A DNA stretch of 64,000 bases from Octopus sinensis (Eukaryota). This document shows, piece after piece, positions 1,717 to 49,973 of this stretch. Every line of letters starts with the position of its first letter. Within the stretch, counting starts at the first letter, position 1. The notes beneath the pieces are model-generated. The model did no database searches. It worked only from the letters and a program-made list of their open reading frames with translations, and was not told where the DNA came from. The position numbers were made by a program, and so were the translations under genes. The stretch lies in the NCBI RefSeq assembly GCF_006345805.1, contig NC_043011.1, positions 63,810,464 through 63,874,463 of the forward strand, read 5' to 3'.

Positions 1717-4143
1717 CATCATCATCATCATCATTGTTCGAGCGTGGTCGAGACAATGGAATATACCATGCTACGCCAGACTTCACGGTCCATCATGGCA
1801 TTACGGAGGTCCTGTTGCTGGATGCCTGTATCCCTGGAGATTACATCAGGGTAGGAGAGTGTGCGCCTTCTGGTATTGCGAGTAGATGACTTCCAGAGGA
1901 GAAGAGTAGAAATTACCTCTTTTTCAGCTCTACAACAATGTCCAGCAAACTGGACTCTCTTACCTTTCACAAGAGATGACACAGGTGGTAGTTTCCCATA
2001 TATTTGCATTTTGGTTGGATGGCGCTTTCACGAGAGATTTTGAGCTCTCATAAGGAGGCGAGTGTAGGTTCCATCCAACCGCCTCTCAAGCTTCTTTGAT
2101 AAAGTCCAGGTTTCTGAGCCATATATTAGAATTGGTTCGACTGTGACTTTGAAGATTTCAAGTTTGAAGTCTCTACTTAGATTTGATGACCAGATCGTAT
2201 GCATGTCATTACAGGCTGACCAGGCCATACCTTTTCTAGTTAGAAAATCTTGTCCAGATGATGATATGTATGAACCAAGATATTTGTAATAAGAAACCAT
2301 ATTTAAGGGCGCATTGTTGAGAGTATGGATGATGCAATCACTGTTGGACAGGCACTTGTTTATGTTTTCAGTCTTGGCCTCATTGAGGTAATGACCTACA
2401 CAATTTGAAGCTTGTTCAAGAGATTGTAAAAGAGACTGGGCATTGGATAGAGAATCACTGATAAGAGCGATGTCGTCAGCAAAGTCAGTGTTTGTCAAGT
2501 ACTCAGCTGGGTGTCTGGAACTTCTTGGATTTATTTCAAAGCCCTTGCCAGAGATGGTATCAACTGACGTACGTAGCACATAATCAACAACAATGATGAA
2601 AAGAATTGGGGCGAGTGTGTCTCCCTGCAGTATTCCGGCTTTGATTGAGAAAGATGATGTTTCTCCGTCAGGGGTTAAGATGGTTGAAGACGTATCTGTG
2701 TAGAGGACCTTGATGGCAGAAATGAATTTTGTCTGGAATCCCATAGAGCTTAAGGATTTCAAACATCTTGTACCTATCTACAGAATCGAACGCTTTAGAA
2801 AAGTCTACAAATACCATTGCAAGATCGTGATTAAATGTTTTTGATTCTTCAATAAGTCTGCGTAGGCATAGTATCTGGCTCAGCGTTGAGCGCCCATGTC
2901 TGAATCCATTTTGCTTCTTTCGGAGCAAAGGTTAAACAAAAAGGACAAGACGATTTAGAATCAGTTTGTTGAACAGTTTTGCAGCAATTGACATTAGAGA
3001 TATACCACTGTAGTTGTTGACGAGGGACAAATCGCGTTTTTTGTGTATTGGGATGATTTGAGATTGGTGCCAAATATTTGGAGCGACAAAGGTGGAAAGT
3101 GTGTGGTTGCAGAGGTTGAGCAAAAGTGTGTGAAATCTATCATTCTTCCAAATTATAGCTGGGATGTTGCCGGGACCAAATGCTTGCGAGGCTTTTAGTT
3201 GCTTGGTGGCTGATGTTAGTTCAAATATGGTAAAAGGGGAGGTGTTGATGTCCAGCGTGTCTGATATAGGCACACTTGGAAGAGTGGGGTTATCAGGGAT
3301 TTTGGCATTCTTCCCAAGGAGGTTTTTAAAATGGGTCGAACAATTTTCTTAACGCTTCTTAGCTGATCCCACTTTAATTCTAATTGATGACCCAGAATTT
3401 TTGCCTGATAGGTCTTTGATGGATTTCCAGGCGAGATGGTGTTTTTAATAATGTGCTCTTTGGATAGTTTACTAATTTTGCCATTGATAAATTCGACGTC
3501 GGCGTTCAAGTAAGCCTCATCAAGATTCTTCTTGGCAGCTATGAGTTGGATCTTCAGTGACTGGGATGGGGAAGGGTGGTAAGCTAGTGATATAGACTTT
3601 AGATGGTTTCTGGCTTCGATGGCATTTGGGGAATTAGAAGGTTTGCTCTGGCCCCATCTCTTCTTTTTGGGAAGAGTAACCAGTGCAACTTCCTCTGTTG
3701 ATTTGTTTAGGCTGCTGTATACTTCTTCAATGTTCTCAGCATCTATTTCAGAAGTAGACAAAGATTGAAATGTGTTATAGACCTCAATAGTAAATTGTTT
3801 GGACATATCGGGGTTAGATAAGACTTCCTCCCAGTCGATCGTTTTCATCGGGTGAGGCATAGCATTTTTGGATGCGCGAAGACTAAGCTTAACGGTAGCT
3901 GATACACTTCTGTAGTCAGAGCCGACAGAACTAAAGGAAGAGTAGGATCTCGAGTTTTTAACACTATTGCGTGATTTCTTTCGAAAGATGAGGTAGTCAA
4001 CGTTTGCCCTATCACCAAGTGGGGACTCAAATGTCCAAAGTTGACCTTTTGGTTTCATAAAAGAATTGTTCGAGGTGTAGAGATTAAATTCCTCCAAGAA
4101 GACTTTGAGCATTTCTTCGTTCCGATTAGTTTTAGAGTTGAAA
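1717..4143 (-). mobile_element. RTE-clade (RTE-X-like) LINE, 5'-truncated and frameshifted
   Basis: Endonuclease C-terminus (WTFESPLGDRANVDYLIF..SVGSDYR), RT motifs FVDFSKAFDSV, GILQGDTLAPILF and DFADDIAL, KYLGS, KRKRG-type C-terminus (QLPPVSSLVKGKR), and a (GAT)n tail at 1717-1734. Split over several ORFs. Confidence 0.9.
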
Positions 4144-9742: not shown

Positions 9743-9831
9743 CAAAGCAATCCTGATAAACGAGTTCCTGGAAGAATTCACCGCACACCTCGTCAGTAAG
9801 TTGCAGGCACACTTCAAATAGCTGAATTCGT
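9743..9831 (-). CDS. Six-Cys family copy C, exon 3
   Basis: Acceptor cttctatgttctAG, donor GTGAGA, 89 nt, phase 2 to phase 1. (K)RIQLFEVCLQLTDEVCGEFFQELVYQDCF has the same Cys spacing as exon 3 of copies A and B. Confidence 0.85.
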
Positions 9832-10439
9832 CTAGAACATAGAAGCTACACTGAGAAGATATTGTTATAAAGTTAACTAAATACGTATAATGACATATTC
9901 TGGTAAAGCTGCGTAGTCGAAAAAGTCTGCTTCTAAGAGGTTCATTTTGAAACCACTGGGAACCGCATTCGATCTCACTGCGTGATAACCTGTGCGTTCT
10001 ACTGTATCTGGACCAACAGATGTTTTGTGAGTGACATACGTTACAAAGAAACTGCGTAGAACATCACGTTCGCGCACGCACACTCACGTACACACATAGG
10101 CATACGCAGTCATACTTATGTATTGTTAGAGGGTGCTGAAGTTAAATCTGATAGTTTGCATGAAAGTAAACGAATGCCCAATATCCCATCCGAATCTAAA
10201 TGTATTTTTTAAAATTCGAAATGATAAAAAATATTATCTCTGGAAGTTTACAGGAAGTAGTCCTCCTCAGCTTCCACCAGGAAATAAGGACGGTTCCGGT
10301 AATATTTCTGCGCCTAGTAAGGTCTTCGAGCACCTCGTTTATTTCCATCATGTCCCTTAGCTTTCATTGTTGTAGGTAGCGTGGTTCGCGTTTTACACGA
10401 GCGCACCGACGCGTGGGATTCCGATCGGAGGATTAGCAA

Positions 10440-10830
10440 CTACAAGAAGATCTAGACCTTCATCAACAGGTGTCTTCGCCAAATCCTCCATCTGAAGTGG
10501 TTCGACACAGTGCCAAACACGGACCTGTGGGAAAAGGCCAACCAGGAGCCCATACATGTTCAGATTAGACGAAGGGAATGGAGATGGGTCGGATAAACAC
10601 TGCGGAAAGAACGCTCAAATGTGACACGACAAGTAATTGACTGGAACCCGCGGGGTAAAAGGAAGCGAGGACGCCCGAAGCAGACATGGAATCGGAGCAT
10701 TTTGAACGAGCTCAGGACGACCGGCCGACATGGGAAGCAGGCAAGAAACACGCCAATGACCGCAAAAAGTGGAAAACAAATGTTGAGGCCCTACGATCGA
10801 AAGGGGCAAAAAAGGATTAAGAAGAAGAAT
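10440..10830 (+). mobile_element. RTE-clade LINE 3' fragment
   Basis: FINRCLRQILHLKWFDTVPNTDLW..WRWVG*TLRK..DWNPRGKRKRGRPKQTW. Confidence 0.8.
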
Positions 10831-11221
10831 ATCTCAAAGAGATTTGAATGTGTTTAAGCAAGCGGACTCTGTCAGAGTGTTTGGCATGTACCACTTGCTA
10901 GCTATAATTCTAGAAGCAACTTTTGCACCCCTCCTTCATAAGTCTTACAAATTCTAAGGCGCACTCAGGAGCTGCAAATATGGTCGGAATTATAGTATCT
11001 GGTATGAATCCTCATGGTGAAAGTGAATCTTTTCTAAAATTTAGACAATTTCCCCTCCGCCACATCCGCTAAATCCATATGCTCTACAATGCTGTTCCCT
11101 GTTCAACCATAATTCAAGAAGTTCCGTTAAACAGAGGATACATAAAATTCGCCGTATTTGACTCTAAGTGTGCACTTTGTGTTGCATAGATATGTATTCA
11201 TACATAGATATGCATACACAC

Positions 11222-11392
<171 letters not shown>

Positions 11393-11927
11393 GTAGATAA
11401 GTTTGTATGTATGTATGTGTGCGTGCGTGTGTCTGTGTGTGTATTTACATCGGGGAAATTTACGTCGCATTATATGCGATTTCCCCCATTGTTAAGATAT
11501 AGCAAATTTCGTACTTCACGATTGTGAAGATTACCACATCTCCAGTTTGGATTTTGCGGCTCTTGAGATTGAACATTAGGAAAAATTGTCATAGCATCCA
11601 CATTTAGATCGGGATCATGTAACGCCAGTGTGAGGAGACGGTGTGGGTCTTCCATTCCTTAGAACCACAAGCCCTCTCATTAATCTATCTTGTCGTATCC
11701 GATTCAGAATGGCGTGGTTCACAGCGAATACCTCTAAGCCAAGGTGAGCAAACTTGATTAATATGTTCCCCACATTCTTATAATAGAAACAGTCAAAAAT
11801 GAATTTTATAGAGTTGAACAAACACATATTATACCTGGATGCATGCATGACATACAAGGCATAACGAAATGAATGAATTCATCAGAGTCAGCATGAGATA
11901 ATGTTCATAGTATAAAGATAACTTTAC

Positions 11928-12030
11928 TTGCAGTAGTTAACATCGTATCCTTCTTTTTCAGGATACGACTCCCTGGCTTTGTCGCAGGTTTTGTTTGCCT
12001 TCTCCATACAGAAATCAGCCGCACCACATC
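11928..12030 (-). CDS. Six-Cys family copy C, exon 2
   Basis: Acceptor gttgaatccacAG, donor GTAAAG, 103 nt, phase 1 to phase 2: (G)[33 protein letters not shown](K). Confidence 0.85.
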
Positions 12031-12195
12031 CTGTGGATTCAACAGCAATTGGTCACATATTATAGACATATATATTATAGAACTTCTATCTATAAATGTT
12101 CTAAAATCTTTCACAGCCTTGGATTTTTATCTCATTCTGAAAATTCATATATGTATATATACATTTATATATGTATATATATACATATATATGTG

Positions 12196-12351
<156 letters not shown>

Positions 12352-15300
12352 TCACTGACTGAAGAGTGACTTGGCTTACCTTACTACGGTTTTGACGCGT
12401 TTTCTTCCAGGTAAGAGTGTTGCTGTGTTGTTAATATTACTTCGTACCATCTGGAACTTGTTGAATTTTACTACTGAAAATTTGTTTTTGAACGTTGTTG
12501 AACTGTCTTGTTCTCCGGTTTTACCGGGGAATAATTGGATAATTTGTTACTGTTGAACTGTTAGCCATTGTGGCTTTTTTATCTACGCGACTGTGTATAG
12601 TCTTGCCAGACTATCTTCGTGCCCCTCCCCCGAATGGGGGTGGGAATTAAACCTAATTTTTGAACTGCTTTTTACCACTCATTGAACTGCTTGGAAGAAA
12701 AACTTTTTATAGTTTTCCCAGTTTTATGGGAAACCAATATTTGTATATTTCTGTTGCCTATTACTAATTTCAACAGAATAATGTCTGTTGAGATTATTCA
12801 CGAAAATAGTGCTCTTGAGGAGAGCAATGTTGATAACTGTAGTAAAAAAAGGTCGGGCGGTAACCGCAGTGGCAACCGAGAACATTGACATCAATGTCAA
12901 TCAGCTCGTCGAGCTATTTAAAAGAATGAAAGAGGAGGGTGGTGATGTTAAAATATCACCCTCCGCCAGTATCGTGGAGACAGAGAAGCGGACCGTAGTG
13001 TTTAAAACCTTCTGTCCACAAAGCAGAAGGTTAAAACACTTTGAAAATAATACTATCGAGAAATGCCTGTCCCCGATTTGGAAGGACATTGTGTACGTCG
13101 CCAAGGGACGGCATATGGCATTGTGGAGGTCCGCTTCTCGGGGGAAGAGGTGGCCTGTGGGCATTCTGTGAATCCCCTAAAAACCAAGGAGGTGGTAATT
13201 CTGTCAACCTATATGGGACGCAGGACGTCCCGGGTCAGGATTGCAGAAGCACCGCTGGAAGTAGATCCCGTTGAGTTAGTGGCCGCCCTGTTATATAAAA
13301 AGACGGACAAAATTAAAATATTGCAGGTAACATGCTCTGCCCCTGAATATTGGCTTGGGCGAGACATTAATGTAATAATTCAAGGAACACAGGAGGACCT
13401 GCAGCTCCTTCCTGAGAGGTTGCTCGTGGGCGAGAATGTGGCCCTCAGGGTACAGGTCGAAGGCCGATAACCCACCTGTTACGCCTGCGGCAAAAAGGAC
13501 CACATTCGTGTTGACTGTCCAGACAAGCAAAAGAATCCGCAGAGACCAGGCCCCTCAGATAATAAAAAAATCCCTACCCTTGCAAACTCAGCTACCCCTG
13601 CAAAAACAAAAAGTCCCACTCCTGCTGTTACGGTGCCAACCCCAAAACAAACTGACAAAAAAACCAGCCCTTGCACTCACAAACCCCTACATTATTAAAA
13701 CCTCCCACCCCCTTAAAAACTGCGGCGCCTACTTAACAAAATATTGCTACCCCAGACGATAATATAGAGGTATCAGAGGGGGGATTTACAACAGTTCGTA
13801 AAAGAATTCGTGCATCATCCCCGTCCACATCCTCTACAAAAAATAATAAAAACAATGACACACCACAGACACCAAAATAAATCCCGCTTAACTGGCCCAG
13901 AAAAAGAAGACAAAAAAATGAACTCATATTAATTGAATATGATACACAAAACAAATATATAAACGATATTGTGGTTCCGTATCACACAGCAAGTCTGTAC
14001 AACAAACACAAAGATCGAAACGAAAGATATGCGTGGATTGCGGAAACAACGTTCAAACAATTAAAAGACAGACACCCAAACGCCATCCGGCGTATCGCGA
14101 ACTTGCCGGACTATCTGAAGAAGGAAGAGAAAGAATGGGCCCACAAATGTGTGGTGAGGTCGGCCCCAACCTCTCCAACGAAATTTAAGTAGAACTTTTA
14201 CTTTTTGTAATTGCTTCTCTTAACCTTGGTTGTTTAAATGTGCGTGGTCTGAGTTCGAAGTAGAAGCAGGCTTGTTTCCTCGAAAACCTCAGATCACATG
14301 ATATACATTTGATGGTTGCTACAGAAACAAAGCTGGACAGCCTACAAACCTCTTCGCCTCTCCTGAATGGCTACGAGAAAATCATCTCTCCTGGCCAGAC
14401 CGGAGGGCGAGGGTGTGTAGTGGTACTGATCCGGAAAGACTTGGCTTTGCAGACAAATACAGTCTATGTGAACCCAGAAGGTGGGCTGATCGACCTTGAT
14501 GTGACATACAGCAGTAAGCCCTTCAGATTGATCGGACTCTATGCACCTTGTGCTAGAGGTTTCCAAACTGATTTTCATCGGCTCCTAGAGGGCTTTCTCG
14601 TGACGTTGAAGACTTTAGTGATATTAGGGGACTTTAATGCTATCGTTGACGTACACATCGATAGCGTTGGCTCGATCTATAGGAAAGTGAACTCACGTCT
14701 CGTGGATCTGCTTAAGCGGTTTCAGCTGGCAGATCGTTACAGACTTGACCATCCGAACGTCCCAGAGTGGACCTGGATGAGTGGCGACGGAAGGTTCAAG
14801 TCTTATCTAGACAGGATAGTGATAAGAACTAGAGATAAGTCTAGTTTTATTTGTCCACAGCTTGTCCAGGTGCCCTATGCTGACCATAAAATGGACATGT
14901 GTTGACTGGGCATAGATAGGAATCGGCTACTGGAAGCTGAACAAGTCTATTTTGACTCGCGAGGCATACCGTAGCCGGAATAAGGAGTTAGTGCAGATGG
15001 CGTTAACCGGAGCCGTGGTTAATAACCGGTGGTGGTTAGCCCTCAAAAGAGCCATTCGATTCGAGTCCACTAGATTTAGTAAACAACTAAGACTAGATAG
15101 GGCTAGAATAGAAGGGCAACTAGTTAAGAACTTAGAGGAGGCGTTGAGGTTGCGCTCTGCATCTCACATTTTAGCGGCGAGAACGGCATTAGACCCTCAC
15201 CTCAAAACCAAACATGAGGGATGTAGAGTTCGGGCTAAAGTACGAGCATTGGGCCGTGAGGGAATTAATGTTGCCGGATGGGCCCGTACGATAGAAACAC

Positions 15301-17150
15301 AGCGTGGAAACGATGCCACAATTGGGTCTCTTGTTGATGAAAACGGATGCAAGGTCAAGAAGAGGGACGAGATGTGTGAGGCACTTCACAAGCACTTCGC
15401 CGAGTTGTTCGGGAGGTGCGGGACGCTGGATCATGGTGAGGCCCCTAGGGACTTCATGTCTGGTTGCCCGCGTCTCTCGACACGAGAGTCTGAGTGCTGT
15501 GAAGGGCCAATCACAGCCGAGGAAGTAATCGAGGTGTTGGGAAAATGCCCCGGGGAGAAGTCGCCGGGTCTCGATGGTCTGCCCTATGAAATTTATAAAA
15601 GTATGCCAGACTTGTTTGGGCACCTGCTGGCTAGCGTCTACGCCAAATGGCAGCAGAATGGCAGAATTCCCACGTTTGCGAGCCGGGGGTGGTGACGTTG
15701 ATCAGGAAGGACCCGAGCAAGGAGGACGAGATAGGGAACTTCAGGCCCATAACTCTGTTGAACGCAGAGTTAAAGATTCTGGCCAAGGTGCTAGCAAAAA
15801 GGTTGGCGCCGGTCGTGGACAAATTATCGGGGAAGCACAAACGAGCGCTATCCCTGGCAGAACGATCCACGATAATCTCCACCTAATACGCTACTCCTTG
15901 GAGAGGGTGGGGAAGCTTTCTGGCGCAGGGGGAGCACTGGTACATTTAGGCCAGTCCAAAGCATTTGATAGGGTCGACCATCTGTACTTGGTGGCGGTCC
16001 TCGGAGAGGCTGGCCTAGGCCCGACCTTTCGAGGCTGGATCGCTGCTTTGTATAGCAACGTCGAGTCTGTAGTCAAGATGAACGGTTTCTTTTCGAAGCC
16101 GTTTAGGATCGAGCGTTCAGTTTGTCAGGGGTGTCCCCTGTCCTCGCTCCTATACGTATTGGCTCTTGAGCCTTTACTGCTGACGTTAGAGGCACTAGGG
16201 GGCGCGCCGCATGATCTATGGTGTGGAAGAGGAGCTACGGCGTATGCGGATGACACCTCCATCATCGTGGCAGACGAAGGCCAGCTTCCAGTGGTGGAAG
16301 AGACCATCAAATGCTACGAGGCGGTGGCAGGAGCAAAGGTTAAGAAGGACAAGTCGGTCGGTTTGCAACTCGGCACCTGGAGGGGCAAGCCGATGCCGTC
16401 CAATAACGTCGTAGGGCGTTGGACGGAAGGTCCTGTTAAGCTGCTCGGTGTCTGGTTCGGGCCAGACCTCCAGATTTAGAAAAATTGGAGTGAGGTGACC
16501 AGCAAGGTGACTGCTCTAACCCAGATCTGGTCTGGGCGGGCTTTATCCCTGCTAGGGAAGGCGGAGGTGGTGCAGATGTTTATAACATCAGTAATCACCT
16601 ACCGTCTGACCGTGGTGCCTCGCCCCGATTTGTGGCTGAACAAGTTGGAGAGAATCCTTTTCCGCATTTTGTGGAAAGGAGGAAAGCCACTTGTAAAGCG
16701 CTCTGTCTGCTGCCAGAAACCGCTAAATGGTGGGCTAGGGATGCTTTGGCTGAGGATGCGAAAACTCGCGTTAAGGTATAGGCACCTCTGGCTTTACCTG
16801 GATAGAGAGCAGGTGTGGTCACCGCACGTCCGGTTCTACCTTCCCCAGTTAACATCCCTAACGGACATCGGTGCATGGATCAAGCGGAGACCTAAACTGG
16901 GTGAATGGAAATTTGGAGTGCCATCAGGCGCTCCAGCTACTCTCTCGGGCGGGCAACGCCGGCAACAGGAGTTCCACCACGGATTTCTATAGCGGGTTAC
17001 TTGAGGTTAAGTCCGAAGACGCCTTGGAGAAGACCCTGGGCTACGATGAAATTCAGTTGGTCAACCTGTTCCGGAGGACGTTCGGGCCGGGGTATTTGGA
17101 TATTTACCAGAAATCCCTGGCCTGGCAGTGTTTCCGTGCGGAAAATCGCC
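12352..17150 (+). mobile_element. L1/Tx1-clade LINE (ORF1 with zinc knuckle, ORF2 APE+RT), degenerate and 3'-truncated
   Basis: ORF1 CCHC knuckle CYACGKKDHIRVDC near 13476. APE motifs CLNVRGL, VATETK, ILGDFNA, SYLDRI and YADHK. RT motifs RPITLLNAELKILAK, QSKAFDRVDH, QGCPLS and AYADD. Tx1-like LSLLGKAEVV. Several stops and frameshifts. Confidence 0.9.
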
Positions 17151-17389
17151 AACTGTCGCACACACACACATATATATATGCGCTCCTGTTCATACCTACA
17201 CATACGCGCCCGCACACCATGTGCGTGCACCTAAGAGTATACATTCATTCATCGTCACTTGAAAACGTACACATCATAACTCTCATCCTTCGCCAAATGT
17301 ATATGTATATACGTACAAATCCACACACACGAACGCGCACCATAAAGGTCCATACACACGTCTATATATACACAAGCACATACATATAT

Positions 17390-17502
<113 letters not shown>

Positions 17503-17660
17503 CATTTGTGTATGTATATACAAACACGCACACGCTATTAAAAATAGTTCGTTTTGGACTCCGTACTGCTTTCAGGCCCCTAATGTGTGTGTGTTGTTGT
17601 CCATGTAAATATGTAAATTTTAGATGTCTAAAGAACAGGAATCAAAAGGAGACTACTTAC

Positions 17661-17697
17661 CAACAATAAGAATCCATATGCACATGAGAGATTTCAT
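17661..17697 (-). CDS. Six-Cys family copy C, exon 1 (ATG + signal peptide)
   Basis: atg aaa tct ctc atg tgc ata tgg att ctt att gtt g|GTAAGT encodes MKSLMCIWILIV+G, 37 nt. An acceptor at 17751 suggests an upstream 5'UTR exon. Confidence 0.85.
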
Positions 17698-23897: not shown

Positions 23898-24099
23898 ATT
23901 CAATAACAATTAACATAAACAATCTGTATTATTCTTAAAACTATCTACCCCTCCCCCATACACACAGACCTTCACAGATGCATTGGTACAGAAGCATTTT
24001 AGTTTGTTTTCAATATATATTTCATATTTGAAATAGTTGCAGCAACATTTCCTTGCCGTCTCAAGTCATTGCTCTAGTTAGAAAATTAACTATGTTGCG

Positions 24100-24223
<124 letters not shown>

Positions 24224-24487
24224 CAGCCGACATATTTTAGCGTTATAACTAATATTTCAATGGTTTATAACACAGAAATTTAATTATAAGATAATATAAA
24301 GCAATCTTTTCACTGTTGTATATATCGTTGTAAATGTAATTTAGAACAGTGGTTTTTTCTCACCTCTATGATAGTTGGATATTTCACGGTATTAGAAAGA
24401 TGCAATTGATATCAGGTAAATATAGAACTTATTACAAAATAATTATCAAATTATCTATTAGACGCTTGTGACATTGATATTTTCATA

Positions 24488-24612
24488 TCAGACGTAATGA
24501 CCAAATAGATTTGCAAAGCATAACACCATGTGGAGTAAAATAAGTACCATCAATAATTTGTGCGGTGGTTTAACATAGAACAGAGCATCATTATTCGTCG
24601 GTGCTTCGTGAG
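24488..24612 (-). CDS. Six-Cys family copy B, terminal exon 4 (GPI-signal-like or TM tail)
   Basis: Acceptor ttttttctgcatatttcAG, phase 1: (A)HEAPTNNDALFYVKPPHKLLMVLILLHMVLCFANLFGHYV*. Confidence 0.8.
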
Positions 24613-24879
24613 CTGAAATATGCAGAAAAAATGGCATTTAATTAAACTTCGGTAGCTTCATTACGGATTATTGAGGTCTAAGTCAAAGAGCATCTTAAAA
24701 GAAATACATTCCGAAAAGTTTCTGCTTAATTTTTACAATAACATTTTGATATCAATTGCTGTTCCACTGAAATAATTATGACAATAGAAACACTCCAATA
24801 TTTTAATGATACTTATGTTAGCAATATCACCGTGATCAGCGTTACCGCCAGGCTGGTCACAAAGCGCTTCGCATTGTTT

Positions 24880-25103
24880 TAGCCTTCAAATGACGCCAAC
24901 CTGCTGGCTAAGCGAGCAGGCCAACAGAAGAAATAGTGAGAGAGAGTTGTGGCGAAAGAGTACAGCAAGGATCGCCACCCCCCCTGCCGTAGTCTCGTGG
25001 AGCTTTAGGTGTTTTTCGCTCAATAAACACTCAGCGCCTGGACTGGGAATCGAAACCGCGCTTCTACAGCCGCGAATCTAACCACTGGGCCATTGCGCCT
25101 CCA
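24880..25103 (-). mobile_element. SINE family 3, 5' part
   Basis: Minus head ggaggcgcaatggcccagtggttag..tttcgattcccag. Confidence 0.75.
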
Positions 25104-25429
25104 TATTAGCAATATATCAAATGAAATTCTATAAGTACACAGGAAAATATCTTTAACTGAACGCCGAAAGGTACATGTTATGCGTAAATGCCGATTTCCT
25201 CATCAATATATTGGATTGATAGTCTTGCTTTATGTGTAGCACATATCTGCGTAGTGAATTAAAAACGCTAAGAAGTCAACAAGTCTTGGTTGATAAATAT
25301 AGTAACAGATAGGTAGGTGGATCATATATAATCTATTTGTTTAGGCAACCCTTCTCCCTCTCTCTCTCTCTCAATACATTTCTAGAGAGAGAGAGAACTT
25401 GTAGTAGCAAGAGTGGATGCAGAGGGGCG

Positions 25430-27690
25430 TTCATTTTCCCTCTTTGCAGAATGAAAGGAAACCTAGATGATAAGGAAATATCGACTATCACATTATGTAC
25501 CTTGTAGGGAAGCACGGGAGTTAGGAAGTATAAATGATGCCTCCTAAAAGCGGAACTCATCAAATTTTGAGGGAAGGGAAAATTCCATCTCATCGATCCA
25601 AGTTTTTCTCAGTTACTCAATCTATCAATCTCGAAAGGATGAAACGCACAGACTACATCGGTGAAATTTGAACACAGAATGTAAAGACGGACGAAATGCA
25701 GCTAAGGGTTTTGCCTGCCGTACTAACAATTCAGCATACTAGCTGCATTCATTAGGAAGGATTAATTATCATTTCTACTAAAGGCACAAGGCCTGAAATT
25801 ACAGGAGGTGCGGGTATTCCATTGCATCGACATCAGTACATGACTATGCATTTGATATTCCCCGTCGTACTGACGATAATAATAATAATAATTATTATTA
25901 TGGTTTGGAATTTTGGCACAAGTCCAGTAAGTTCAGTTGGAGTGATAATTCGATTACATCGACTCCAATATTCAGTTGCTCCATATTTCAGTGACCCTGA
26001 TAGAATGAAAGGAATAGTCGACCTCGACGGAATTTGAACTCAAAGCGTAAGTGTAGACGAAATACTGCTTAGCATTTCGCTTGGCGCACTAACGATTGTT
26101 ATTTCTTTACTACCCACAAGGGGCTACAAACAAGGTTATACAAACGGTTTAAGTCGATTATATCGACCCCAGTGCGCAACTCGTACTTAACTCATCGACC
26201 CCGAAAGGATGAAAGGCAAAGCCGACCTCGGCGGAATTTGAACTCAGAAGGTAGCGGCAGACGAAATACTGCTAAGCATTTCGTCCGGCGTGTTAACGTT
26301 CCTGCCAGCTCGCAGCCTTCGTAAGGAGTGTATTAATAACAAGTAATAATAGTTACAAAAATTATTTGAATTGCATGAAATATCGATTTTTCATAATTAT
26401 TAATACAGTAAAGTGATCACAGAAAATATATTGGATGAGTAACATTCGTTTGTAATGTAATTCGATGCTGCAATTATTCCTTCTAATAAGACCAAATTAA
26501 TTCAAATATATTACCAGGGCATACAGAAAAATGCTGATCGTGGAAGAACCATTTACATTCTACGAAACTTCCTTCAAAACAACTTTCGTATACTTGCAGA
26601 CGTCTGTAAAAGAATTAGAAAAATAGAGGAACTGGGTACGTTTTGGCTTAGTTATGATACAAAGTAAATATTATATTGGTGTCCCATTTTGGCACAAGAG
26701 CATCACGTTCGTGGTAGAGGAGAAGTTCGTCACGTCGACCCTAGTATTTAAGTGTTACTTGTTGCATTAACCGTAAAATGATGAAAGGCAATGTTTCCTT
26801 TGGTGAAATTTGAAAACTGAACGGGAAAACGGACGGATGCCGCTGGAAGTTTTGACCTGCAAACTAAAGTTTCTGTCTATTCTAGCCACAAGGCCCGAAA
26901 TTTTGGGGGAGAGGGCCAGGCGATTAGATCGATCCCAATACGTAACTGGTACTTAATTTATCGACTCCGAAAGGATGAAAGGCAAAGTCGACCTCGGCGG
27001 AATTTGAACTGAGAACGTAACGAAATACCTATTTCTTTACTACCCACAAGGGACTAAACACAGAGGGGACAAACAAGGACAGACAAACGGATTAAATCGA
27101 TTATATAGACCCCAGTACGTAACTGGTACTTAATTTATCGACCCTGAAATGATGAAAGGCAAAGTCGACCTCGGCGAAATTTGAACTCAGAACGTAGTGG
27201 CAGACGAAATACCGCTAAGCATTATCACCTGGCGTGCTAATGTTTCTGGCTGCTCGCCGCCTTTATAGAGATTTATATTACATTAGTTTGAAACTCTGCC
27301 ATAAAGTAATCCAGGTGGGTTAAGTTAAATACATCGACCGCAGTGCCGCCTAACAGTCACTTATCTAATCGATTCCGAAAGGATGAAAAGCAAAGACGAC
27401 TTCGGTGGAATTTGAACTAAGAATGTAACGGCAGAGGAATTACGCTAAACATTTCGCCCGGGATGCTAAAAATTGTGGCATCACACCGCCGTTTAAAGTT
27501 AATATTATATTGATGGATAGAATATATACCTGTCGGTTAGAATGTTGTATATAGTGAGCTACTGTCTAACCGCAAATACAGCTTTCGCATGAACCTATAA
27601 CTAGTTTCCTTAGATTTTATTTTACCTGAATGCAAATATCTACGTGCGCATATGTGGATGCCTGCTAACGTTTCTGCCAGCTCGCCGCCT
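25430..27690 (-). mobile_element. Cluster of about 7-8 same-orientation SINE family 2 copies and fragments (interrupted by copy B exon 3)
   Basis: Repeated aaaggatgaaaggcaaagtcgacctcggcggaatttgaactc blocks at ~25630, 26005, 26205, 26780, 26970, 27150 and 27380; head gccagctcgccgcc at ~27250 and ~27680. Confidence 0.85.
26515..26603 (-). CDS. Six-Cys family copy B, exon 3
   Basis: Acceptor ttctaattcttttacAG, donor GTAATA, 89 nt, phase 2 to phase 1: (K)RLQVYESCFEGSFVECKWFFHDQHFSVCP. Confidence 0.88.
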
Positions 27691-27729
27691 TAATATATAT
27701 ATATAGATATATGTGTGTATGTGTGTGTG

Positions 27730-27880
27730 GCCATGCTGCAGCATCGACTTTACTCGAAGAAATCGACCCAGACTTATTCTTTCAAAGCCTAGTACTTATC
27801 GGTCTCTTTTGCCGAAGCGCTTTGCTACAGTGACGTAAACATACCAACATCGGTTGTCAAGACCTGGGGCGACCAAACGC
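27730..27880 (-). mobile_element. SINE family 1, 3' fragment
   Basis: ggccatgctgcagc..gacttattctttc..cggtctcttttgccgaa..acatcggttgtcaag. Confidence 0.7.
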
Positions 27881-28459
27881 ACGCACACATATACACACAC
27901 GCACATATAGCTGTGTGTATGTGTCTTTCTGACTGTGTTTATCCCGTCACCACTAAAACTTAAAGACGGTGCCCCAGTATGGCCACAGTATAATTATTGA
28001 AATAAGGAAAAGGTAAAAGGTTTAAGATAAATGTTTGTCATAATCAAACAAATCTGCTAATCCAGAATCTGTAGGATCGAATGCCATAATTACCAGCCAA
28101 ATACAGCTGCTTAGATTACAATAAAGATATATAAATTACTTTTTAAAAGTTGTAGAAGGCCAGCAGCTAATGAGAGGAAACGGAAGTTGATAACATCGAC
28201 TAATTCCTTCAGTGGTTCTTATACTATCGGTCCTGCGAACCAGAACCTCGATTCCATATCGGACGTATTAAAACTCACAATGTAATAAGCCCGAACGAAT
28301 GACGCTAATTTTAGATTAAAATATATTAAAACAAATATATATTTAAATAATGAAAGACATATAAGCTTCGTATAGAATATAAGAATAAACTTATAGATAT
28401 ACATGTATGTGTTTGTATGTATATATATATGTCACAGTTTGTGGTTTGTGTGTGTGAGA

Positions 28460-28558
<99 letters not shown>

Positions 28559-28595
28559 TATATACACATACATATAGTCATGCATACATACATAC

Positions 28596-28695
28596 TTGCA
28601 TTGGAAGATATCTGGTCTTAATATTGGGTAAGCTCTCAGGGCAACTTCGCAATATGATTTTGCAATCGAGTAGCATTTCTGTGACGTATCGGCTC
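28596..28695 (-). CDS. Six-Cys family copy B, exon 2
   Basis: Acceptor attatgtatttgtAG, donor GTATGT, 100 nt, phase 1 to phase 2: (G)[32 protein letters not shown](K). Confidence 0.88.
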
Positions 28696-28980
28696 CTACA
28701 AATACATAATCTCATATTATTAAAGAGAAGCGAGCCTCCGTCTGTCTTTCCGTAACAATATCTGTGTAGAGGGAAGAAGAAGGTTAGGAAAAAATGGTTG
28801 CAGTTGAGAGAGATGTACAGTAAGAAAGTGTGAGAGCGAAAGAGAGTGCTTGTGTGTGTGTGTATGTGCGCGTGTGTGACAGATAAAGAAATAGATAATT
28901 TTGTCACCCTAGGTCTGTTTAAAATGCGCTAACTTTAAGTCCTTGTCTCTCAGCACAACGCAATAGACTTGAAAAATGAC

Positions 28981-29058
<78 letters not shown>

Positions 29059-29624
29059 ATCCATGTACGTATATATTGTTCGTTTTATGTTTGTGTTCGG
29101 TTGCAGGTCAGGTGAAAGGGGTCACCACGTGATGCTGCCCCGTCTGCTAAACCAACTCAATGGAAAGGCTTGCTTCAGGTAGTCTCATTGTCAACTAAAA
29201 AGGGAGCTGGACAAAATTAACTAAATTAGCATAGAATAATGGTTTCAGATTTTTTTATAATTAAGATCTAAACTGTTAATATATGAACACGAAATACATT
29301 GTTGAATAACTGTGAAGTTATTTTGTGCTACCCTGTATATAATCAAATTACAACAAATGCATTCTGGTTCACTGCAGCTGTTTCTGACACTTTTTGTTGA
29401 TGAATAGAAGTGATGCATCATGCAAAAATAAAAGGAATAATAATAATAAAATAAATAAAATAGTTTTTGTTTCTGGTGAATACACGAAAGAAATAATCAT
29501 TTTATATAAACATTTCAATAAAATGCACAAAGCGCCATGTTGAATTTCTCGTCCAAAATTCGGTCCTTAGTGCATAACTGGGTATGTTTATGGGAAACAC
29601 GTGACAGCTAAAGACGGTACTCAC

Positions 29625-29661
29625 CAATAATGAGGCCAAATAGAATTATTGAAACTTTCAT
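29625..29661 (-). CDS. Six-Cys family copy B, exon 1 (ATG + signal peptide)
   Basis: atg aaa gtt tca ata att cta ttt ggc ctc att att g|GTGAGT encodes MKVSIILFGLII+G, 37 nt. Confidence 0.88.
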
Positions 29662-30518
29662 TCCGGATATTCGTATGAAAATCAAGGTCGGTCAATGCAA
29701 TAACTTCTTGCATGTAACTGAACATTTCGTAATATTATTTAATGGGTGTTTGGCTCATTCAGATGGTATTTACACGTTGTCCATAAAAAATAATAAAATA
29801 TTTTCCTGCGGCATTTTAATGATATATACATGCCATATATAAAGAGGTTTATATGAGTTTTCTGACATGTATAGTCTTGGATCTTTTTTGCCTTTATGAA
29901 AGCAAATATCGATTCGGATTTTCATTTCATTATTTATATGTGGAAGATGCTTCCACATATAAAGGTCGATTTATTTATGAATGTATTAATGCATGTACCC
30001 TCGCACTCTATTATTATCAATGTATAAAGACAAATGCACACGGAATAGTTATTATGTACAAGTTATGTTTCGCTCCATCACTTTGGCTGTCTTCAGGTAC
30101 ATTGACAAAGAAATCTCAGAAGATACTTTTTTTTGTGTCGGTTCCGCTATTGTTATATCGATTTCGGGAATTGATATAAGCAAATGATATTATAGTGGCG
30201 TGAAAAGTTCTAATGTGAACGCGGAAATCTTGCGCTCCAGCTTAGATAAAATAAGCTTATCAGCTTTCCCTGTCATAAAAGAAGGAGAAAAGGACAGTAA
30301 TATTTAGACAAGCAGTATCATGTTCGTGCATTTCCATACGAATGGACAGACAGAGGGACATATATATATATATAAATACGTAGACACACACATACTTATA
30401 TGTATACATACGTTTACATTCACATGTATTTATTTATACTATTGAACCTTCGGAGGGGTATTATGCCGGAGTGATGTTTGTAGTAGGCACACCACACGAG
30501 CAACTATCCCGCAGATTT

Positions 30519-30564: not shown

Positions 30565-30730
30565 ATATTTCTTTCGTACCCACAATGGGCTAAACATAGA
30601 GGGGACAAACAAGGACAGACAAAGGGATTAAGTCGATTACATCGATTCAGTGCGAAACTGGTACTTTATTTATCGACCCCGAGAGGATGAAAGGCAAAGT
30701 CGACCTCGAATAAATTTGAACTCAGAACAT
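30565..30730 (-). mobile_element. SINE family 2, 3' part
   Basis: tatttctttcgtacccacaatggg..gaaaggcaaagtcgacctc..ttgaactcagaac. Confidence 0.8.
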
Positions 30731-30740
30731 AACGACACAC

Positions 30741-30798
<58 letters not shown>

Positions 30799-31992: not shown

Positions 31993-32810
31993 GGTTCGCA
32001 AATTTCAAAGTGGAGATTTCAGTGTTGAAGATGAAGATCGAACAGGAAGTCCAGTTGAGTTTGGTGATAAGCTCTTTGAAGCATTACTTGAAGAAACTCC
32101 TGTATCATCAGTTGAAGAATTGGCAATAAAGCTTAATTCAAACCACATAACTGTTCATCGTCAGTTTCAACAACTTGGAAATATTCCTAAAGTTGGAAAA
32201 TGCGTTCCTCATGAATTGTCCGAAAGCAACCGCAAATCCCGAGTTGATATCTGCTCTTCTCTCCATTCTCGCGAGCTCATTTCACCTTTTGTGGATAGAC
32301 TTGTGACTGGTGAAGAAAAATGGATCTTCTATCGAAATTTTAAATGTCGTAAGCAGTGGCTTGGTAAAATGGAAATAACTCAACCATAACCGAGACGGGA
32401 GCTTCATGCGAAAACAGCTCTCTCTATCTGCTGGGATTGCAATGGAGCAATTCACTTTGAATTGTTACCACCTAATGCTCAAGTCTACTGTCAGCAATTA
32501 GAGCGTTTGAACCAAGCTTTGAAGAAAAGAGGCCCGCTTTAGTGAATGGAAAAGGAGTGATGGATGTTTCATAAGGACAATGCACGACCCCACACTGCAA
32601 AGATCACATCACAGAAGGTCGATGAGCTTGGTTGGGGAAAATTTCCAATCCAGCTTATTCTCCCGACCTTGCTCCTTCAGACTACCATTTGTTTTGTAGT
32701 TTACAGAATCATTTGGGGGGCATAATTTTCGTAAGCCAGAGTTCTTCGCTTTGAAACCAAAGGAGATTTACATTGATGGGATTTAAAATCTTGTAAATAG
32801 ATGGAAGCGG
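31992..32810 (+). mobile_element. Mariner (Tc1/mariner, DD34D-type) transposase remnant
   Basis: WFAKFKSGDFSVEDEDRTGSP, CVPHELS, LVTGEEKWIFY, DNARPH and YSPDLAPSDYHLF motifs, with stops and frameshifts; no TIRs seen. Confidence 0.9.
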
Positions 32811-35359: not shown

Positions 35360-35560
35360 TCCAGCTGGCAGATTTATTAGCACGCCGGGAAAAAATGCTT
35401 AGCGGCATTTCGTCCGACATAGAGTTCTGAGTTCAAGTCCTGAGGAGGCCGACTTTGCCATTATTGATTTTGTACTCGATAAAGTAAGTACAATTACTGG
35501 GTTTCTTAGTAGTCGACTTCACCGCTTCCCCAGTTTGCTGGTCTTGTACCAAAATTTGAA
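35360..35560 (+). mobile_element. SINE family 2 copy
   Basis: agctggcagatttattagcacgccgggaaaaaatgcttagcggcatttcg..ctgagttcaagtcc. Confidence 0.75.
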
Positions 35561-47308: not shown

Positions 47309-47469
47309 AGAGACGTCAGCACGCCGGGCGAATTGTTTAGCGGTATTTCGCCAGTCTTTACTTTTTGCGTTCAAATTTCGCCGTGGTCAACTTTGCCTTT
47401 CATCCTTTCGGGGTCGAACTGAGACCCCTTTCCAAAAATATCGGGCCTTGTTCTTATAGCACAAAAGAA
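47309..47469 (+). mobile_element. SINE family 2, truncated copy with 15-bp TSD-like flanks
   Basis: gtcagcacgccgggcgaattgtttagcggtatttcg..; flanks tatttctaccaacga (47294-47308) and tattactaccaacga (47470-47484). Confidence 0.75.
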
Positions 47470-47503: not shown

Positions 47504-47591
47504 CACACATAAATGGTAATAGACGAATCTGAAATAGCCAGTACAATAATCGTTTACGTGCTCAAAACAATACGGAAACATTCTGTAGGTT
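47504..47591 (-). CDS. Six-Cys family copy A, exon 3
   Basis: Acceptor tttttttacttacAG, donor GTAAGA, 88 nt. Only the phase-2 frame is open: (R)TYRMFPYCFEHVNDYCTGYFRFVYYHLCV. Confidence 0.88.
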
Positions 47592-49245: not shown

Positions 49246-49973
49246 TTACAGGCTTTTTATATCCAATTGAGTATTCCTAATGTCTCCTTTCTTCCCTGAG
49301 GAAATGTAATACATTTGACAGTATGTATGAAAGTATTGGCTAACAGCCCGTAGATCAGACTGAAGGCATGCCCGGTCACCCACTTCATTGATGACCTTTT
49401 GGAGTTTGAAATCATCTGCAGAGATTCTTATGTTATTGTGCTTGATAATGTCAATAATGCCATTGATGTAAATGATGAAAACAAGTGGGTCCAAAACAGT
49501 GCCTTGTGGAACACCATTACTGACTTTGGCTGGGCTTGATTTTACTCCTTCGACTAAAACGTGTTGGGTTCTGCCTGTCAGGAAACACTTGATCCATTGT
49601 AGTATCTTCCCAGAGACACCAATTTTGGATAGTTTTTTCAAGAGGAAAAGGCCTCGTTATCAAAGATCCTGCTGAAATCAAGGTAGCTGTCACCAGTATT
49701 CGAGGCCTCTCCCGAACCACTCAAAATGCCATCAAAATGATGCAGGAGCTGCGTTAGGCAGTTCCTTCTATTACAGAACCCTTATTGTTAGAGGTTCAGG
49801 AGTTTTTTGCTTTCAAGAAAGTGGGTTATCCCTGATCTCACTACCCTCTCAAATACTTTGATATGAGAGGTGAGCGACATCGGCCGGTAGATCCCTGCAA
49901 TTGTCTTGCTTTCCTTTTTGAAAACTGGGACAACAGACTGAGAAATAAAGTTTTCAGGAATACATGCAAGCAT
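49246..49973 (-). mobile_element. CR1/L2-clade LINE RT fragment
   Basis: YRPMSLTSHIKVFERVV, GVSGKILQWIKCFLTGRTQHV, GVPQGTVLDP and ISADDFKL. Confidence 0.85.

What the first reader, a model, noticed from the sequence alone, without database searches (positions are those of the whole stretch)
24488..29661. Copy B: complete four-exon model for a 116-aa putative GPI-anchored protein
All six splice sites are canonical and the phases chain without adjustment. Product: [116 protein letters not shown]. The tail has small residues (NNDA), a polar spacer and a long hydrophobic end, the established layout of a GPI signal. A single-pass helix is the alternative reading. This is the best copy for experiments.
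Basis: partly seen in the sequence, partly recalled or inferred. Interest (0 to 1): 0.75.

Follow-up and report, generated by a model that had tools for sequence, protein, structure and literature searches.

The report
Unannotated small octopus surface-protein gene
The four-exon model is a real, intact gene for one more member of an octopus-only, tandemly repeated family of tiny cysteine-rich proteins that most likely sit on the cell surface by a lipid (GPI) anchor; it is missing from the protein databases searched, and its function is unknown.

Summary

Canonical splice sites are not the evidence. About 7x10^7 equally valid four-exon models fit the same 6.2 kb. Homology is the evidence:
- An exhaustive phmmer search found 18 relatives, all from Octopus and all uncharacterized.
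- Six annotated O. bimaculoides paralogues have the same coding layout: 37-61 / 97-100 / 89 / 89-146 nt, phases 1, 2, 1. Copy B is 37 / 100 / 89 / 125 nt.
- Profiles built without any window sequence pick out exons 2 and 3 (E about 1e-6).

The family has a signal peptide, six invariant cysteines in a confidently predicted helical bundle, and short uncharged hydrophobic tails that run to the last residue. This fits a GPI anchor better than a membrane helix.

The domain weakly but consistently resembles the N-terminal domain of repulsive guidance molecules. Foldseek did not confirm this.

No protein at least 50% identical turned up, so the gene appears unannotated. Expression, anchoring and function were not tested. 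This is a new member of an uncharacterized family, of modest interest.

The parts
29625..29661 (-). Copy B coding exon 1 (37 nt, ends in phase 1): ATG plus the signal-peptide core MKVSIILFGLII(G).
   Evidence: exact translation; donor G|gtgagt. (top non-microsatellite signal-peptide-like first exon upstream of exon 2). (P0009 and P0007 first exons are also 37 nt, phase 1).
28596..28695 (-). Copy B coding exon 2 (100 nt, ends in phase 2): end of the signal peptide, Cys1, Cys2, the YP..PD loop and Cys3 (…[34 protein letters not shown]).
   Evidence: Family profiles without the query give E 2.9e-6. Exon 2 is 100 nt and phase 2 in P0009, P0007, P0010, P0017 and P0026. The exon end TGCAA|gta is shared with paralogues P0010 and P0017 and with copy A.
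26515..26603 (-). Copy B coding exon 3 (89 nt, ends in phase 1): Cys4, Cys5, Cys6 (RLQVYESCFEGSFVECKWFFHDQHFSVCP).
   Evidence: Profile E 1.5e-5 and 6.8e-7. Exon 3 is exactly 89 nt and phase 1 in all six annotated paralogues examined.
24488..24612 (-). Copy B coding exon 4 (125 nt including TGA): candidate omega region NNDA, spacer LFYVKPPHK, and a 22-residue uncharged hydrophobic tail that runs to the C-terminus.
   Evidence: (best non-repeat phase-1 terminal exon, 80% pyrimidine tract). (phmmer alignments with P0013, P0010, P0005 and P0011 run to query residues 99-104). (spacer similarity to P0005 and P0010, p 0.002 and 0.001). (tail analysis).
24279..24284 (-). Candidate polyadenylation signal ATTAAA, 203 nt after the stop codon.
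   Evidence: A hexamer match only, so this is weak evidence.
17661..17697 (-). Copy A (neighbouring paralogue) exon 1, 37 nt: MKSLMCIWILIV(G), donor G|gtaagt.
11928..12030 (-). Copy A exon 2, 103 nt (one extra codon), phase 2.
   Evidence: Profile E 1.5e-6 and 5.1e-6.
9743..9831 (-). Copy A exon 3, 89 nt, phase 1. The last exon of copy A was not identified.
   Evidence: Profile E 0.003 and 8.3e-5. (no convincing terminal exon).
47504..47591 (-). Lone exon-3-like remnant ('copy C'), 88 nt, so the family phase is broken. No exon 2 was found nearby.
   Evidence: (E 0.0033).

Best explanation
Copy B is a genuine, intact four-exon gene. It is a previously unannotated paralogue in a tandemly arrayed family of very small secretory-pathway proteins, detected so far only in Octopus.

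Inferred steps:
- The precursor enters the ER through an N-terminal signal peptide. Cleavage is predicted around G13-S17, two to six residues before the first Cys.
- Residues about 17-78 fold into a compact helical bundle locked by three disulfides (six invariant Cys, plus invariant P36 and R47).
- The C-terminal 30-odd residues form a GPI-attachment signal: a small-residue site N83-D-A, a spacer, then an uncharged hydrophobic tail to the last residue.
- The transamidase would remove that signal, leaving a lipid-anchored domain of about 67 residues on the outer face of the plasma membrane.

The domain is a remote relative, or a close mimic, of the RGM N-terminal domain, which is the BMP/GDF-binding three-helix, three-disulfide module of GPI-anchored repulsive guidance molecules. 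The most likely mode of action is therefore a surface-tethered binding module (co-receptor or decoy) for a secreted ligand.

Shown: the gene structure, family membership, conserved residues, and the predicted fold of two paralogues.
Inferred: expression, signal-peptide cleavage, GPI anchoring and ligand binding.
For: - The model translates exactly.
- There are 18 Octopus-only relatives. Several are 106-123 aa with the same layout of signal peptide, domain and tail.
- Invariant C20, C28, P36, C45, R47, C54, C62 and C74 are all present in copy B.
- Exon sizes and phases match six annotated paralogues.
- Query-free profiles find exons 2 and 3 at E about 1e-6, well separated from noise.
- Exon 4 is similar to paralogue last exons.
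- The paralogues lie in tandem arrays of 3-5 kb genes in O. bimaculoides (CM046618.1, 49.56-49.96 Mb). The window carries a second copy on the same strand.
- AlphaFold2 on paralogues gives pLDDT 96-97 (P0010 domain) and a mean of 90 (P0006 domain), with helices around the cysteines.
- Uncharged hydrophobic tails of 12-25 residues run to the very C-terminus in ten family members.
- Pfam RGM_N exceeds its gathering score in P0003 (37.9 bits) and P0014 (29.1 bits), and matches 18 of 36 single repeats at E<1.
- The family profile's top four PDB hits are RGMB N-terminal-domain chains (one set also labelled RGMC), E 0.03-0.14, with Cys3-Cys4-Cys5 aligned at identical spacing.
- hhalign against RGMA/B N-domains gives E 3.6e-4.
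- The RGM N-domain is a three-helix bundle with three disulfides on a GPI-anchored protein (PMC7354924).
Against: - There is no transcript or proteomic evidence for copy B.
- No protein at least 50% identical exists among 1.84 billion cluster representatives. The gene is either missed by annotators or not expressed.
- The query alone has no Pfam hit even at E 10.
- The hhalign probability is only 37%, over 31 columns.
- Foldseek against the PDB found no significant match and no RGM chain for either model.
- The spacing of the first two cysteines and of the last one differs from RGM: C-x7-C and x11 here, against C-x4-C and x21 in RGM.
- Copy B's own tail is 22 uncharged residues, long enough for a membrane helix.
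- No trained GPI predictor was available.
Confidence: 0.72

Rival explanations
1. The same gene and fold, but the C-terminal hydrophobic stretch is a true transmembrane helix. The protein would be a type I single-pass protein with essentially no cytoplasmic tail, not a GPI-anchored one.
For: Copy B's uncharged tail is 22 residues (LLMVLILLHMVLCFANLFGHYV) and is preceded by K94. That is long enough to span a bilayer. AlphaFold2 draws the paralogue's tail as a helix.
Against: - The tail ends at the last residue, with no cytoplasmic or stop-transfer charges.
- In paralogues P0005, P0009, P0010, P0011 and P0017 the uncharged tail is only 12-15 residues, too short for a membrane helix, yet occupies the same position.
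- A small-residue site (N-D-A) with a spacer lies upstream, as in GPI signals.
Confidence: 0.12
2. Structurally intact but silent: a recently decayed or never-expressed paralogue (an 'unprocessed pseudogene in waiting') in a fast-turnover tandem array.
For: - There is no annotated protein at least 50% identical in any of three annotated Octopus genomes represented in the library.
- Its neighbours show decay. Copy A has no identifiable last exon and a LINE in intron 1. Copy C is a lone out-of-phase exon.
- A pseudo-exon with an in-frame stop is seen in the O. vulgaris array (L006:301-408).
Against: - The ORF is complete, with all six splice sites good.
- All eight family-invariant residues are retained at only 25-41% identity to paralogues.
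- Small genes in repeat-rich arrays are often missed or fused by annotators. The O. vulgaris models span 37-82 kb for 177-373 aa.
Confidence: 0.15
3. A chance chain of open reading-frame pieces with GT/AG ends, and not a gene.
For: About 7x10^7 such chains can be drawn in the same 6.2 kb. Exon 2 abuts a (TA)n microsatellite.
Against: Query-free family profiles hit exactly these exons at E 1e-5 to 1e-7. Exon lengths and phases are identical to six annotated paralogues. The whole-protein phmmer E-value reaches 1.4e-31.
Confidence: 0.01

Closest known systems
Octopus bimaculoides 'uncharacterized protein' LOC128249786-789, LOC128249851-853 and LOC128249882 (P0005, P0026, P0017, P0010, P0007, P0011, P0009, P0013), with multi-domain relatives LOC128249887, LOC128248155 and LOC106874482; also O. 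vulgaris CAI9735827/829/840/841 and O. sinensis LOC115219848 and LOC118763774
   Same: - Signal peptide and the six-Cys domain C-x7-C-x16-C-x8-C-x7-C-x11-C, with invariant P and R.
- C-terminal hydrophobic tail.
- Four coding exons with phases 1, 2, 1 and an 89-nt exon 3.
- Tandem arrangement.
   Different: - Only 25-41% identical to any of them.
- No orthologue at 50% identity or more was found.
- A longer tail (22 against 12-15 uncharged residues).
- Some relatives carry 2-9 domain repeats or lack the tail, so they would be secreted.
N-terminal domain of repulsive guidance molecules (RGMA/B/C; Pfam RGM_N PF06535; PDB 4UHY, 4UI0, 4UI1)
   Same: - About 60-75 residues, three helices, six cysteines forming three disulfides, on a GPI-anchored protein.
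- The central C-x8-C-x7-C block aligns with the same spacing.
- RGM_N is the best and recurrent match by Pfam, PDB profile search and hhalign.
   Different: - No RGM C-terminal (partial vWD) domain and no autocleavage site. The whole protein is 116 aa.
- The spacing of Cys1-Cys2 and Cys5-Cys6 differs.
- Scores are marginal, the query alone does not hit, and Foldseek does not recover RGM chains.
- A review states that RGM domains are not reported in other families (PMC10084454).
GDNF/GAS1 domain (GFR-alpha receptors and GAS1; Pfam PF02351)
   Same: These are cysteine-rich all-helical extracellular domains on GPI-anchored proteins (established knowledge). UniProt names one family member, A0A0L8GPX5 (P0004), 'GDNF/GAS1 domain-containing protein'.
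   Different: No Pfam GDNF hit appears for P0004 or any other member even at E 10. No GFR-alpha or GAS1 chain appears in the PDB profile search at E<=10.
Ly6/uPAR (three-finger) small GPI-anchored proteins
   Same: They work alike in outline. Each is a roughly 70-90 residue disulfide-locked single domain tethered by GPI, encoded by small multi-exon genes in tandem clusters, and acting as a modulator or co-receptor (established knowledge).
   Different: The fold is different. Ly6/uPAR is a beta-strand three-finger with 8-10 Cys, whereas this domain is helical with 6 Cys. There is no sequence match.

Membership tests
Octopus small six-Cys GPI-tailed protein family (LOC128249786-853 type) | Significant sequence similarity across the domain | tested here: met
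   phmmer E-values range from 1.4e-31 to 3.2e-5 for 18 Octopus proteins. Query-free profiles hit exons 2 and 3 at E 1e-5 to 1e-7.
Octopus small six-Cys GPI-tailed protein family (LOC128249786-853 type) | Six invariant cysteines plus invariant Pro and Arg at fixed spacing | tested here: met
   C20, C28, P36, C45, R47, C54, C62 and C74 are invariant in A1. The six Cys are invariant in 36 domains, and P and R are conserved in at least 90%.
Octopus small six-Cys GPI-tailed protein family (LOC128249786-853 type) | Four coding exons with intron phases 1, 2, 1; exon 2 of about 100 nt; exon 3 of 89 nt | tested here: met
   Copy B is 37/100/89/125 nt. Six paralogues are 37-61 / 97-100 / 89 / 89-146 nt with the same phases.
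Octopus small six-Cys GPI-tailed protein family (LOC128249786-853 type) | N-terminal signal peptide and a C-terminal uncharged hydrophobic tail that ends the protein | tested here: met
   These used rule-based inspection, not a trained predictor.
GPI-anchored proteins | Sequence signal: small omega, omega+2 residues, a short spacer, then a hydrophobic stretch of 10-20 or more residues to the C-terminus with no cytoplasmic residues | tested here: met
   N83-D84-A85, then a 9-residue polar spacer (LFYVKPPHK), then a 22-residue uncharged tail to the last residue (my rule scored 12 residues to the most hydrophobic 10-residue window). The feature recurs in ten family members.
GPI-anchored proteins | Actual lipid anchoring (PI-PLC release, GPI-peptide mass spectrometry) | not testable with these tools
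   This needs an experiment. No NetGPI, PredGPI or big-PI predictor was available either.
Repulsive guidance molecules (RGM) | RGM_N domain above Pfam's gathering score | tested here: inconclusive
   - The query has no hit.
- Paralogues P0003 (37.9 bits) and P0014 (29.1 bits) exceed the cut-off of 24.2, and 18 of 36 repeats hit at E<1.
- PDB profile search gives E 0.03-0.14.
- hhalign gives probability 37%, E 3.6e-4.
- Foldseek gives no RGM match.
Repulsive guidance molecules (RGM) | RGM C-terminal domain (partial vWD with an autocatalytic cleavage site) that binds Neogenin | tested here: not met
   After the 60-residue domain the protein has only the anchor signal. No RGM_C hit appears in any member. 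It is therefore not an RGM, and at most a stand-alone RGM_N-like module.
Repulsive guidance molecules (RGM) | Three-helix bundle with three disulfides | tested here: inconclusive
   AlphaFold2 on paralogues predicts helices at 2-11/13-18, 28-39 and 44-57 of the domain with pLDDT around 90-97, and six invariant Cys. Disulfide pairing and superposition on 4UI0 were not computed.
GDNF/GAS1 domain proteins (GFR-alpha, GAS1) | Match to the GDNF/GAS1 domain model or to solved GFR-alpha/GAS1 chains | tested here: not met
   There is no PF02351 hit at E<=10 and no such chain in the PDB profile search. The only link is a UniProt name on P0004.

The most novel reading that the evidence does not exclude
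Octopuses have taken the BMP/GDF-binding N-terminal module of repulsive guidance molecules, freed it from the rest of RGM, and amplified it. The products would be an array of stand-alone GPI-anchored (and multi-repeat secreted) surface modules that tune TGF-beta-family or other cystine-knot ligand signalling cell by cell. This would be the first RGM_N-type domain outside RGMs and a lineage-specific surface code alongside the octopus protocadherin expansion. Copy B would be an unannotated member of that code.
Probability: 0.15. Interest if true: 0.65.

Novelty: new member of a known kind. Interest (0 to 1): 0.36.

Why it matters
- It shows that small multi-exon genes in repeat-dense cephalopod DNA are being missed. 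No annotated protein is at least 50% identical. In O. vulgaris they may also be fused into 37-82 kb models.
- It gives a clean rule for finding the rest: exons of about 37-61 / 100 / 89 nt, phases 1, 2, 1, and the six-Cys motif.
- The family is restricted to Octopus as far as a single-sequence search can see. It is tandemly expanded, probably cell-surface, and wholly uncharacterized.
- Lineage-specific surface families are candidates for cephalopod neural or sensory novelties. A link to the RGM ligand-binding module would give a testable biochemical hypothesis.
- For this single copy, the gain is an added gene model, not a new principle.

Tried and rejected
- Word-indexed protein search with the query found nothing. 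With the 36-domain alignment it also found nothing, even though family members are in the collection. The index seems blind to these proteins, so its silence is uninformative.
- Pfam on the query gave no family at E<=10.
- Rfam and tRNA scans of the window found nothing.
- Self-BLAST of 24-30.2 kb found only intronic SINE repeats and no DNA-level paralogue of any exon. tblastn with the query missed copy A, which needed a Cys-spacing regex and family HMMs.
I did not try to get round this and modelled the paralogues P0010 and P0006 instead.
- Foldseek against the PDB, with the full-length and the domain-only models, gave no hit below E 3.6.
- I tried to place the window in a genome. The exact look-up of a 426-aa window ORF was not on record. 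Seven fetched Octopus loci do not overlap the window. Only transposon-level similarity (80-94%) to O. vulgaris loci was seen, and none to O. bimaculoides loci. This suggests, but does not prove, the O. vulgaris/sinensis lineage.
- No orthologue of copy B lies in those loci, so no dN/dS could be computed.
- No convincing terminal exon was found for copy A. No exon 2 was found for copy C.
- Literature searches on locus names, on octopus plus RGM, and on octopus plus cysteine-rich GPI turned up nothing on this family.
- A chance ORF chain was considered and rejected.

Full report
**What is there**

The window is AT-rich eukaryotic DNA, dense in microsatellites, SINE copies and retrotransposon fragments.
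- exon 1: 29661-29625 (37 nt)
- exon 2: 28695-28596 (100 nt)
- exon 3: 26603-26515 (89 nt)
- exon 4: 24612-24488 (125 nt, including TGA)

The donors are G|gtgagt, A|gtatgt and G|gtaata. All three acceptors are AG, and two have strong pyrimidine tracts. The phases are 1, 2, 1.

**Is it more than chance?**

A dynamic-programming count finds 7.3x10^7 formally valid ATG / GT-AG / in-phase / stop four-exon models of 100-140 aa on this strand of 24001-30200. The opposite strand has 5.5x10^7. Canonical dinucleotides and chaining phases carry no weight.

Homology carries the weight. An exhaustive phmmer scan of 1.84 billion cluster representatives returned 18 proteins at E<=1e-3, with the best at 1.4e-31. 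All are from Octopus bimaculoides, O. vulgaris or O. sinensis. All are named 'uncharacterized' or 'hypothetical', except one that UniProt calls 'GDNF/GAS1 domain-containing'. Several (P0005, P0009, P0010, P0011, P0013, P0017) are 106-123 aa with the same layout as the query. Their alignments run from residue 1-2 to residue 99-104 of the query, so they reach into all four exons.

**Independent confirmation of each exon**

- A profile built from eight annotated paralogues, without the query, was run against all 3184 stop-free six-frame segments of the window. It ranks copy B exon 2 (E 2.9e-6) and exon 3 (E 1.5e-5) at the top.
- A 34-domain profile gives 2.9e-6 and 6.8e-7, with the first noise hit at E 0.47.
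- I mapped six annotated O. bimaculoides paralogues onto their genomic loci. Every one has four coding exons of 37-61 / 97-100 / 89 / 89-146 nt with phases 1, 2, 1. Copy B is 37 / 100 / 89 / 125 nt with the same phases.
Nothing near 28279-28304 or 28166 scores.
- Exon 4 is the best non-repeat, phase-1 terminal exon downstream. Its polar part resembles the last exons of P0005 and P0010 (AH....N.D...Y[IV]; permutation p 0.002 and 0.001).
- An ATTAAA lies 203 nt past the stop. This is weak evidence.

**The protein and the family**

Eight columns are invariant across the single-domain members, and all are present in copy B: C20, C28, P36, C45, R47, C54, C62 and C74. Across 36 domain repeats the six Cys remain invariant with spacing C-x7-C-x16-C-x8-C-x7-C-x11-C.

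AlphaFold2 on two paralogues gave confident models:
- pLDDT 96-97 over the domain of P0010
- mean pLDDT 90 for the isolated domain of P0006

Both show helices at domain residues 2-11/13-18, 28-39 and 44-57.

The family also contains proteins with 2-9 tandem domains, some without a hydrophobic tail. In O. bimaculoides the small genes lie head-to-tail, each 3-5 kb, over at least 400 kb of CM046618.1 (49.56-49.96 Mb).

**GPI anchor or membrane helix?**

Ten family members, including the query, end in an uncharged hydrophobic stretch that runs to the last residue. In most of the single-domain paralogues it is only 12-15 residues, preceded by a polar spacer and small residues. That is the layout of a GPI-attachment signal and is too short for a membrane helix.

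Copy B's own tail is 22 residues, so taken alone it could span a bilayer. It has no cytoplasmic residues, however, and N83-D-A followed by a spacer fits an omega site. I put GPI at roughly 0.7 and a single-pass helix at roughly 0.1. This is a rule-based inference. No trained predictor or experiment was available.

**What it resembles**

- Pfam gives nothing for the query. RGM_N (PF06535) exceeds its gathering score in P0003 (37.9 bits) and P0014 (29.1 bits), and matches 18 of 36 isolated repeats at E<1.
- The family profile's only credible PDB hits are four RGMB N-terminal-domain chains (one set also labelled RGMC), E 0.03-0.14, with Cys3, Cys4 and Cys5 aligned at identical spacing.
- hhalign against RGMA/RGMB N-domains gives E 3.6e-4 but a probability of only 37% over 31 columns. 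Those sequences were verified against 4UHZ and 4UHY.
- The RGM N-domain is a bundle of three helices held by three disulfides. It binds BMP/GDF ligands on a GPI-anchored protein (PMC7354924).
- A review states that RGM domains are not reported in other families (PMC10084454).
- Against the link: Foldseek found no significant PDB match for either model, the outer cysteine spacings differ, and there is no RGM C-terminal domain.

So this protein is not an RGM. It may be a stand-alone RGM_N-like module. The GDNF/GAS1 label on P0004 could not be reproduced.

**Mechanism, with its status**

- Shown: the gene structure, family membership, conserved residues and the predicted helical fold of paralogues.
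- Inferred: ER entry and signal-peptide cleavage, three disulfides, GPI transamidation near N83, and display of a domain of about 67 residues on the cell surface as a tethered binding module (co-receptor or decoy).
- The ligand is unknown. A BMP/GDF-type ligand is a guess that rests only on the weak RGM_N similarity.

**Annotation status and source**

No representative is at least 50% identical to copy B (best 41%). Neither the gene nor a close orthologue is therefore in the protein collection. It has either been missed by annotators or is silent.

Decay in the neighbourhood keeps the silent-copy rival alive at about 0.15:
- Copy A has exons 17697-17661, 12030-11928 and 9831-9743, but no identifiable last exon, and a LINE sits in its intron 1.
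- A lone 88-nt exon-3-like remnant lies at 47591-47504.

The window does not overlap any of seven fetched Octopus loci. It shares transposon copies at 80-94% identity only with O. vulgaris loci. This hints at the O. vulgaris/sinensis lineage.

**Verdict**

This is a new, unannotated member of an uncharacterized, apparently Octopus-restricted family. Literature searches found nothing on the family. Interest is modest for this single copy. It would be higher for the family if the RGM_N link and surface display were confirmed.

Noticed in passing
window 9743-17697, minus strand: Copy A of the same family. Its exons are 17697-17661, 12030-11928 and 9831-9743 (37/103/89 nt, phases 1, 2, 1). They encode [76 protein letters not shown], with all six Cys. 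No convincing last exon was found, so the copy may be truncated or may end differently.
   Followed up: partly
window 14309-16992, plus strand: A LINE-type retrotransposon (ORFs with Exo_endo_phos endonuclease and RVT_1 reverse transcriptase) sits inside intron 1 of copy A, on the opposite strand. It stretches that intron to about 5.6 kb, against 0.9 kb in copy B.
   Followed up: partly
window 47504-47591, minus strand: A lone exon-3-like piece (…TYRMFPYCFEHVNDYCTGYFRFVYYHLCV) with a good acceptor and donor, but 88 nt instead of 89, so the family phase is broken. The family profile gives E 0.0033. No exon 2 or exon 1 was found nearby. It is probably a gene remnant.
   Followed up: partly
window 25600-27500 (introns 2-3 of copy B); also about 30566-30744, 35363-35491, 47309-47417 and 60534-60761: At least six copies of one SINE-like repeat of about 180-370 bp ('…tcgaccccgaaaggatgaaaggcaaagtcgacctcggcggaatttgaactcagaacgta…') at 69-88% identity, packed into the introns of copy B. 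ARAGORN and Rfam do not call them.
   Followed up: no
window 28440-28560 and 28985-29055: Long (TA)n microsatellites lie in the introns flanking exon 2 of copy B (about 35 bp downstream and about 290 bp upstream of it). The exon-2 donor lies in the (CATA/GTAT)-rich edge of one. Such tracts could hamper assembly and annotation of these small genes.
   Followed up: no
window 57622-58902, plus strand: A 426-aa ORF with a C-terminal GIY-YIG nuclease match (E 2.7e-4), which together with its reverse-transcriptase-like N-terminal part (my reading, no Pfam hit) suggests a Penelope-like retroelement. Further RVT_1 fragments lie at 2028-2762 (-), 49246-49641 (-) and 53387-53935 (+).
   Followed up: partly
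window 32561-32695, plus strand: An incidental tblastn hit reads WMFHKDNARPHTAK…, which resembles the conserved motif of mariner/Tc1 transposases. This is recalled from knowledge and was not tested.
   Followed up: no
L003, L006 and L007 (O. vulgaris OX597831.1, 15.43-15.53 and 17.11-17.26 Mb): The O. vulgaris models P0015, P0003 and P0008 span 37, 69.5 and 82 kb for only 177-373 aa and contain 2-4 family domains. They look like several small tandem genes fused by the annotator. L006:301-408 holds an exon-2-like piece with an in-frame stop.
   Followed up: no
tool behaviour: The word-indexed protein search returned nothing, even for an alignment made of proteins that are in its own collection. 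Its negative results say nothing about these eukaryotic proteins.
   Followed up: partly
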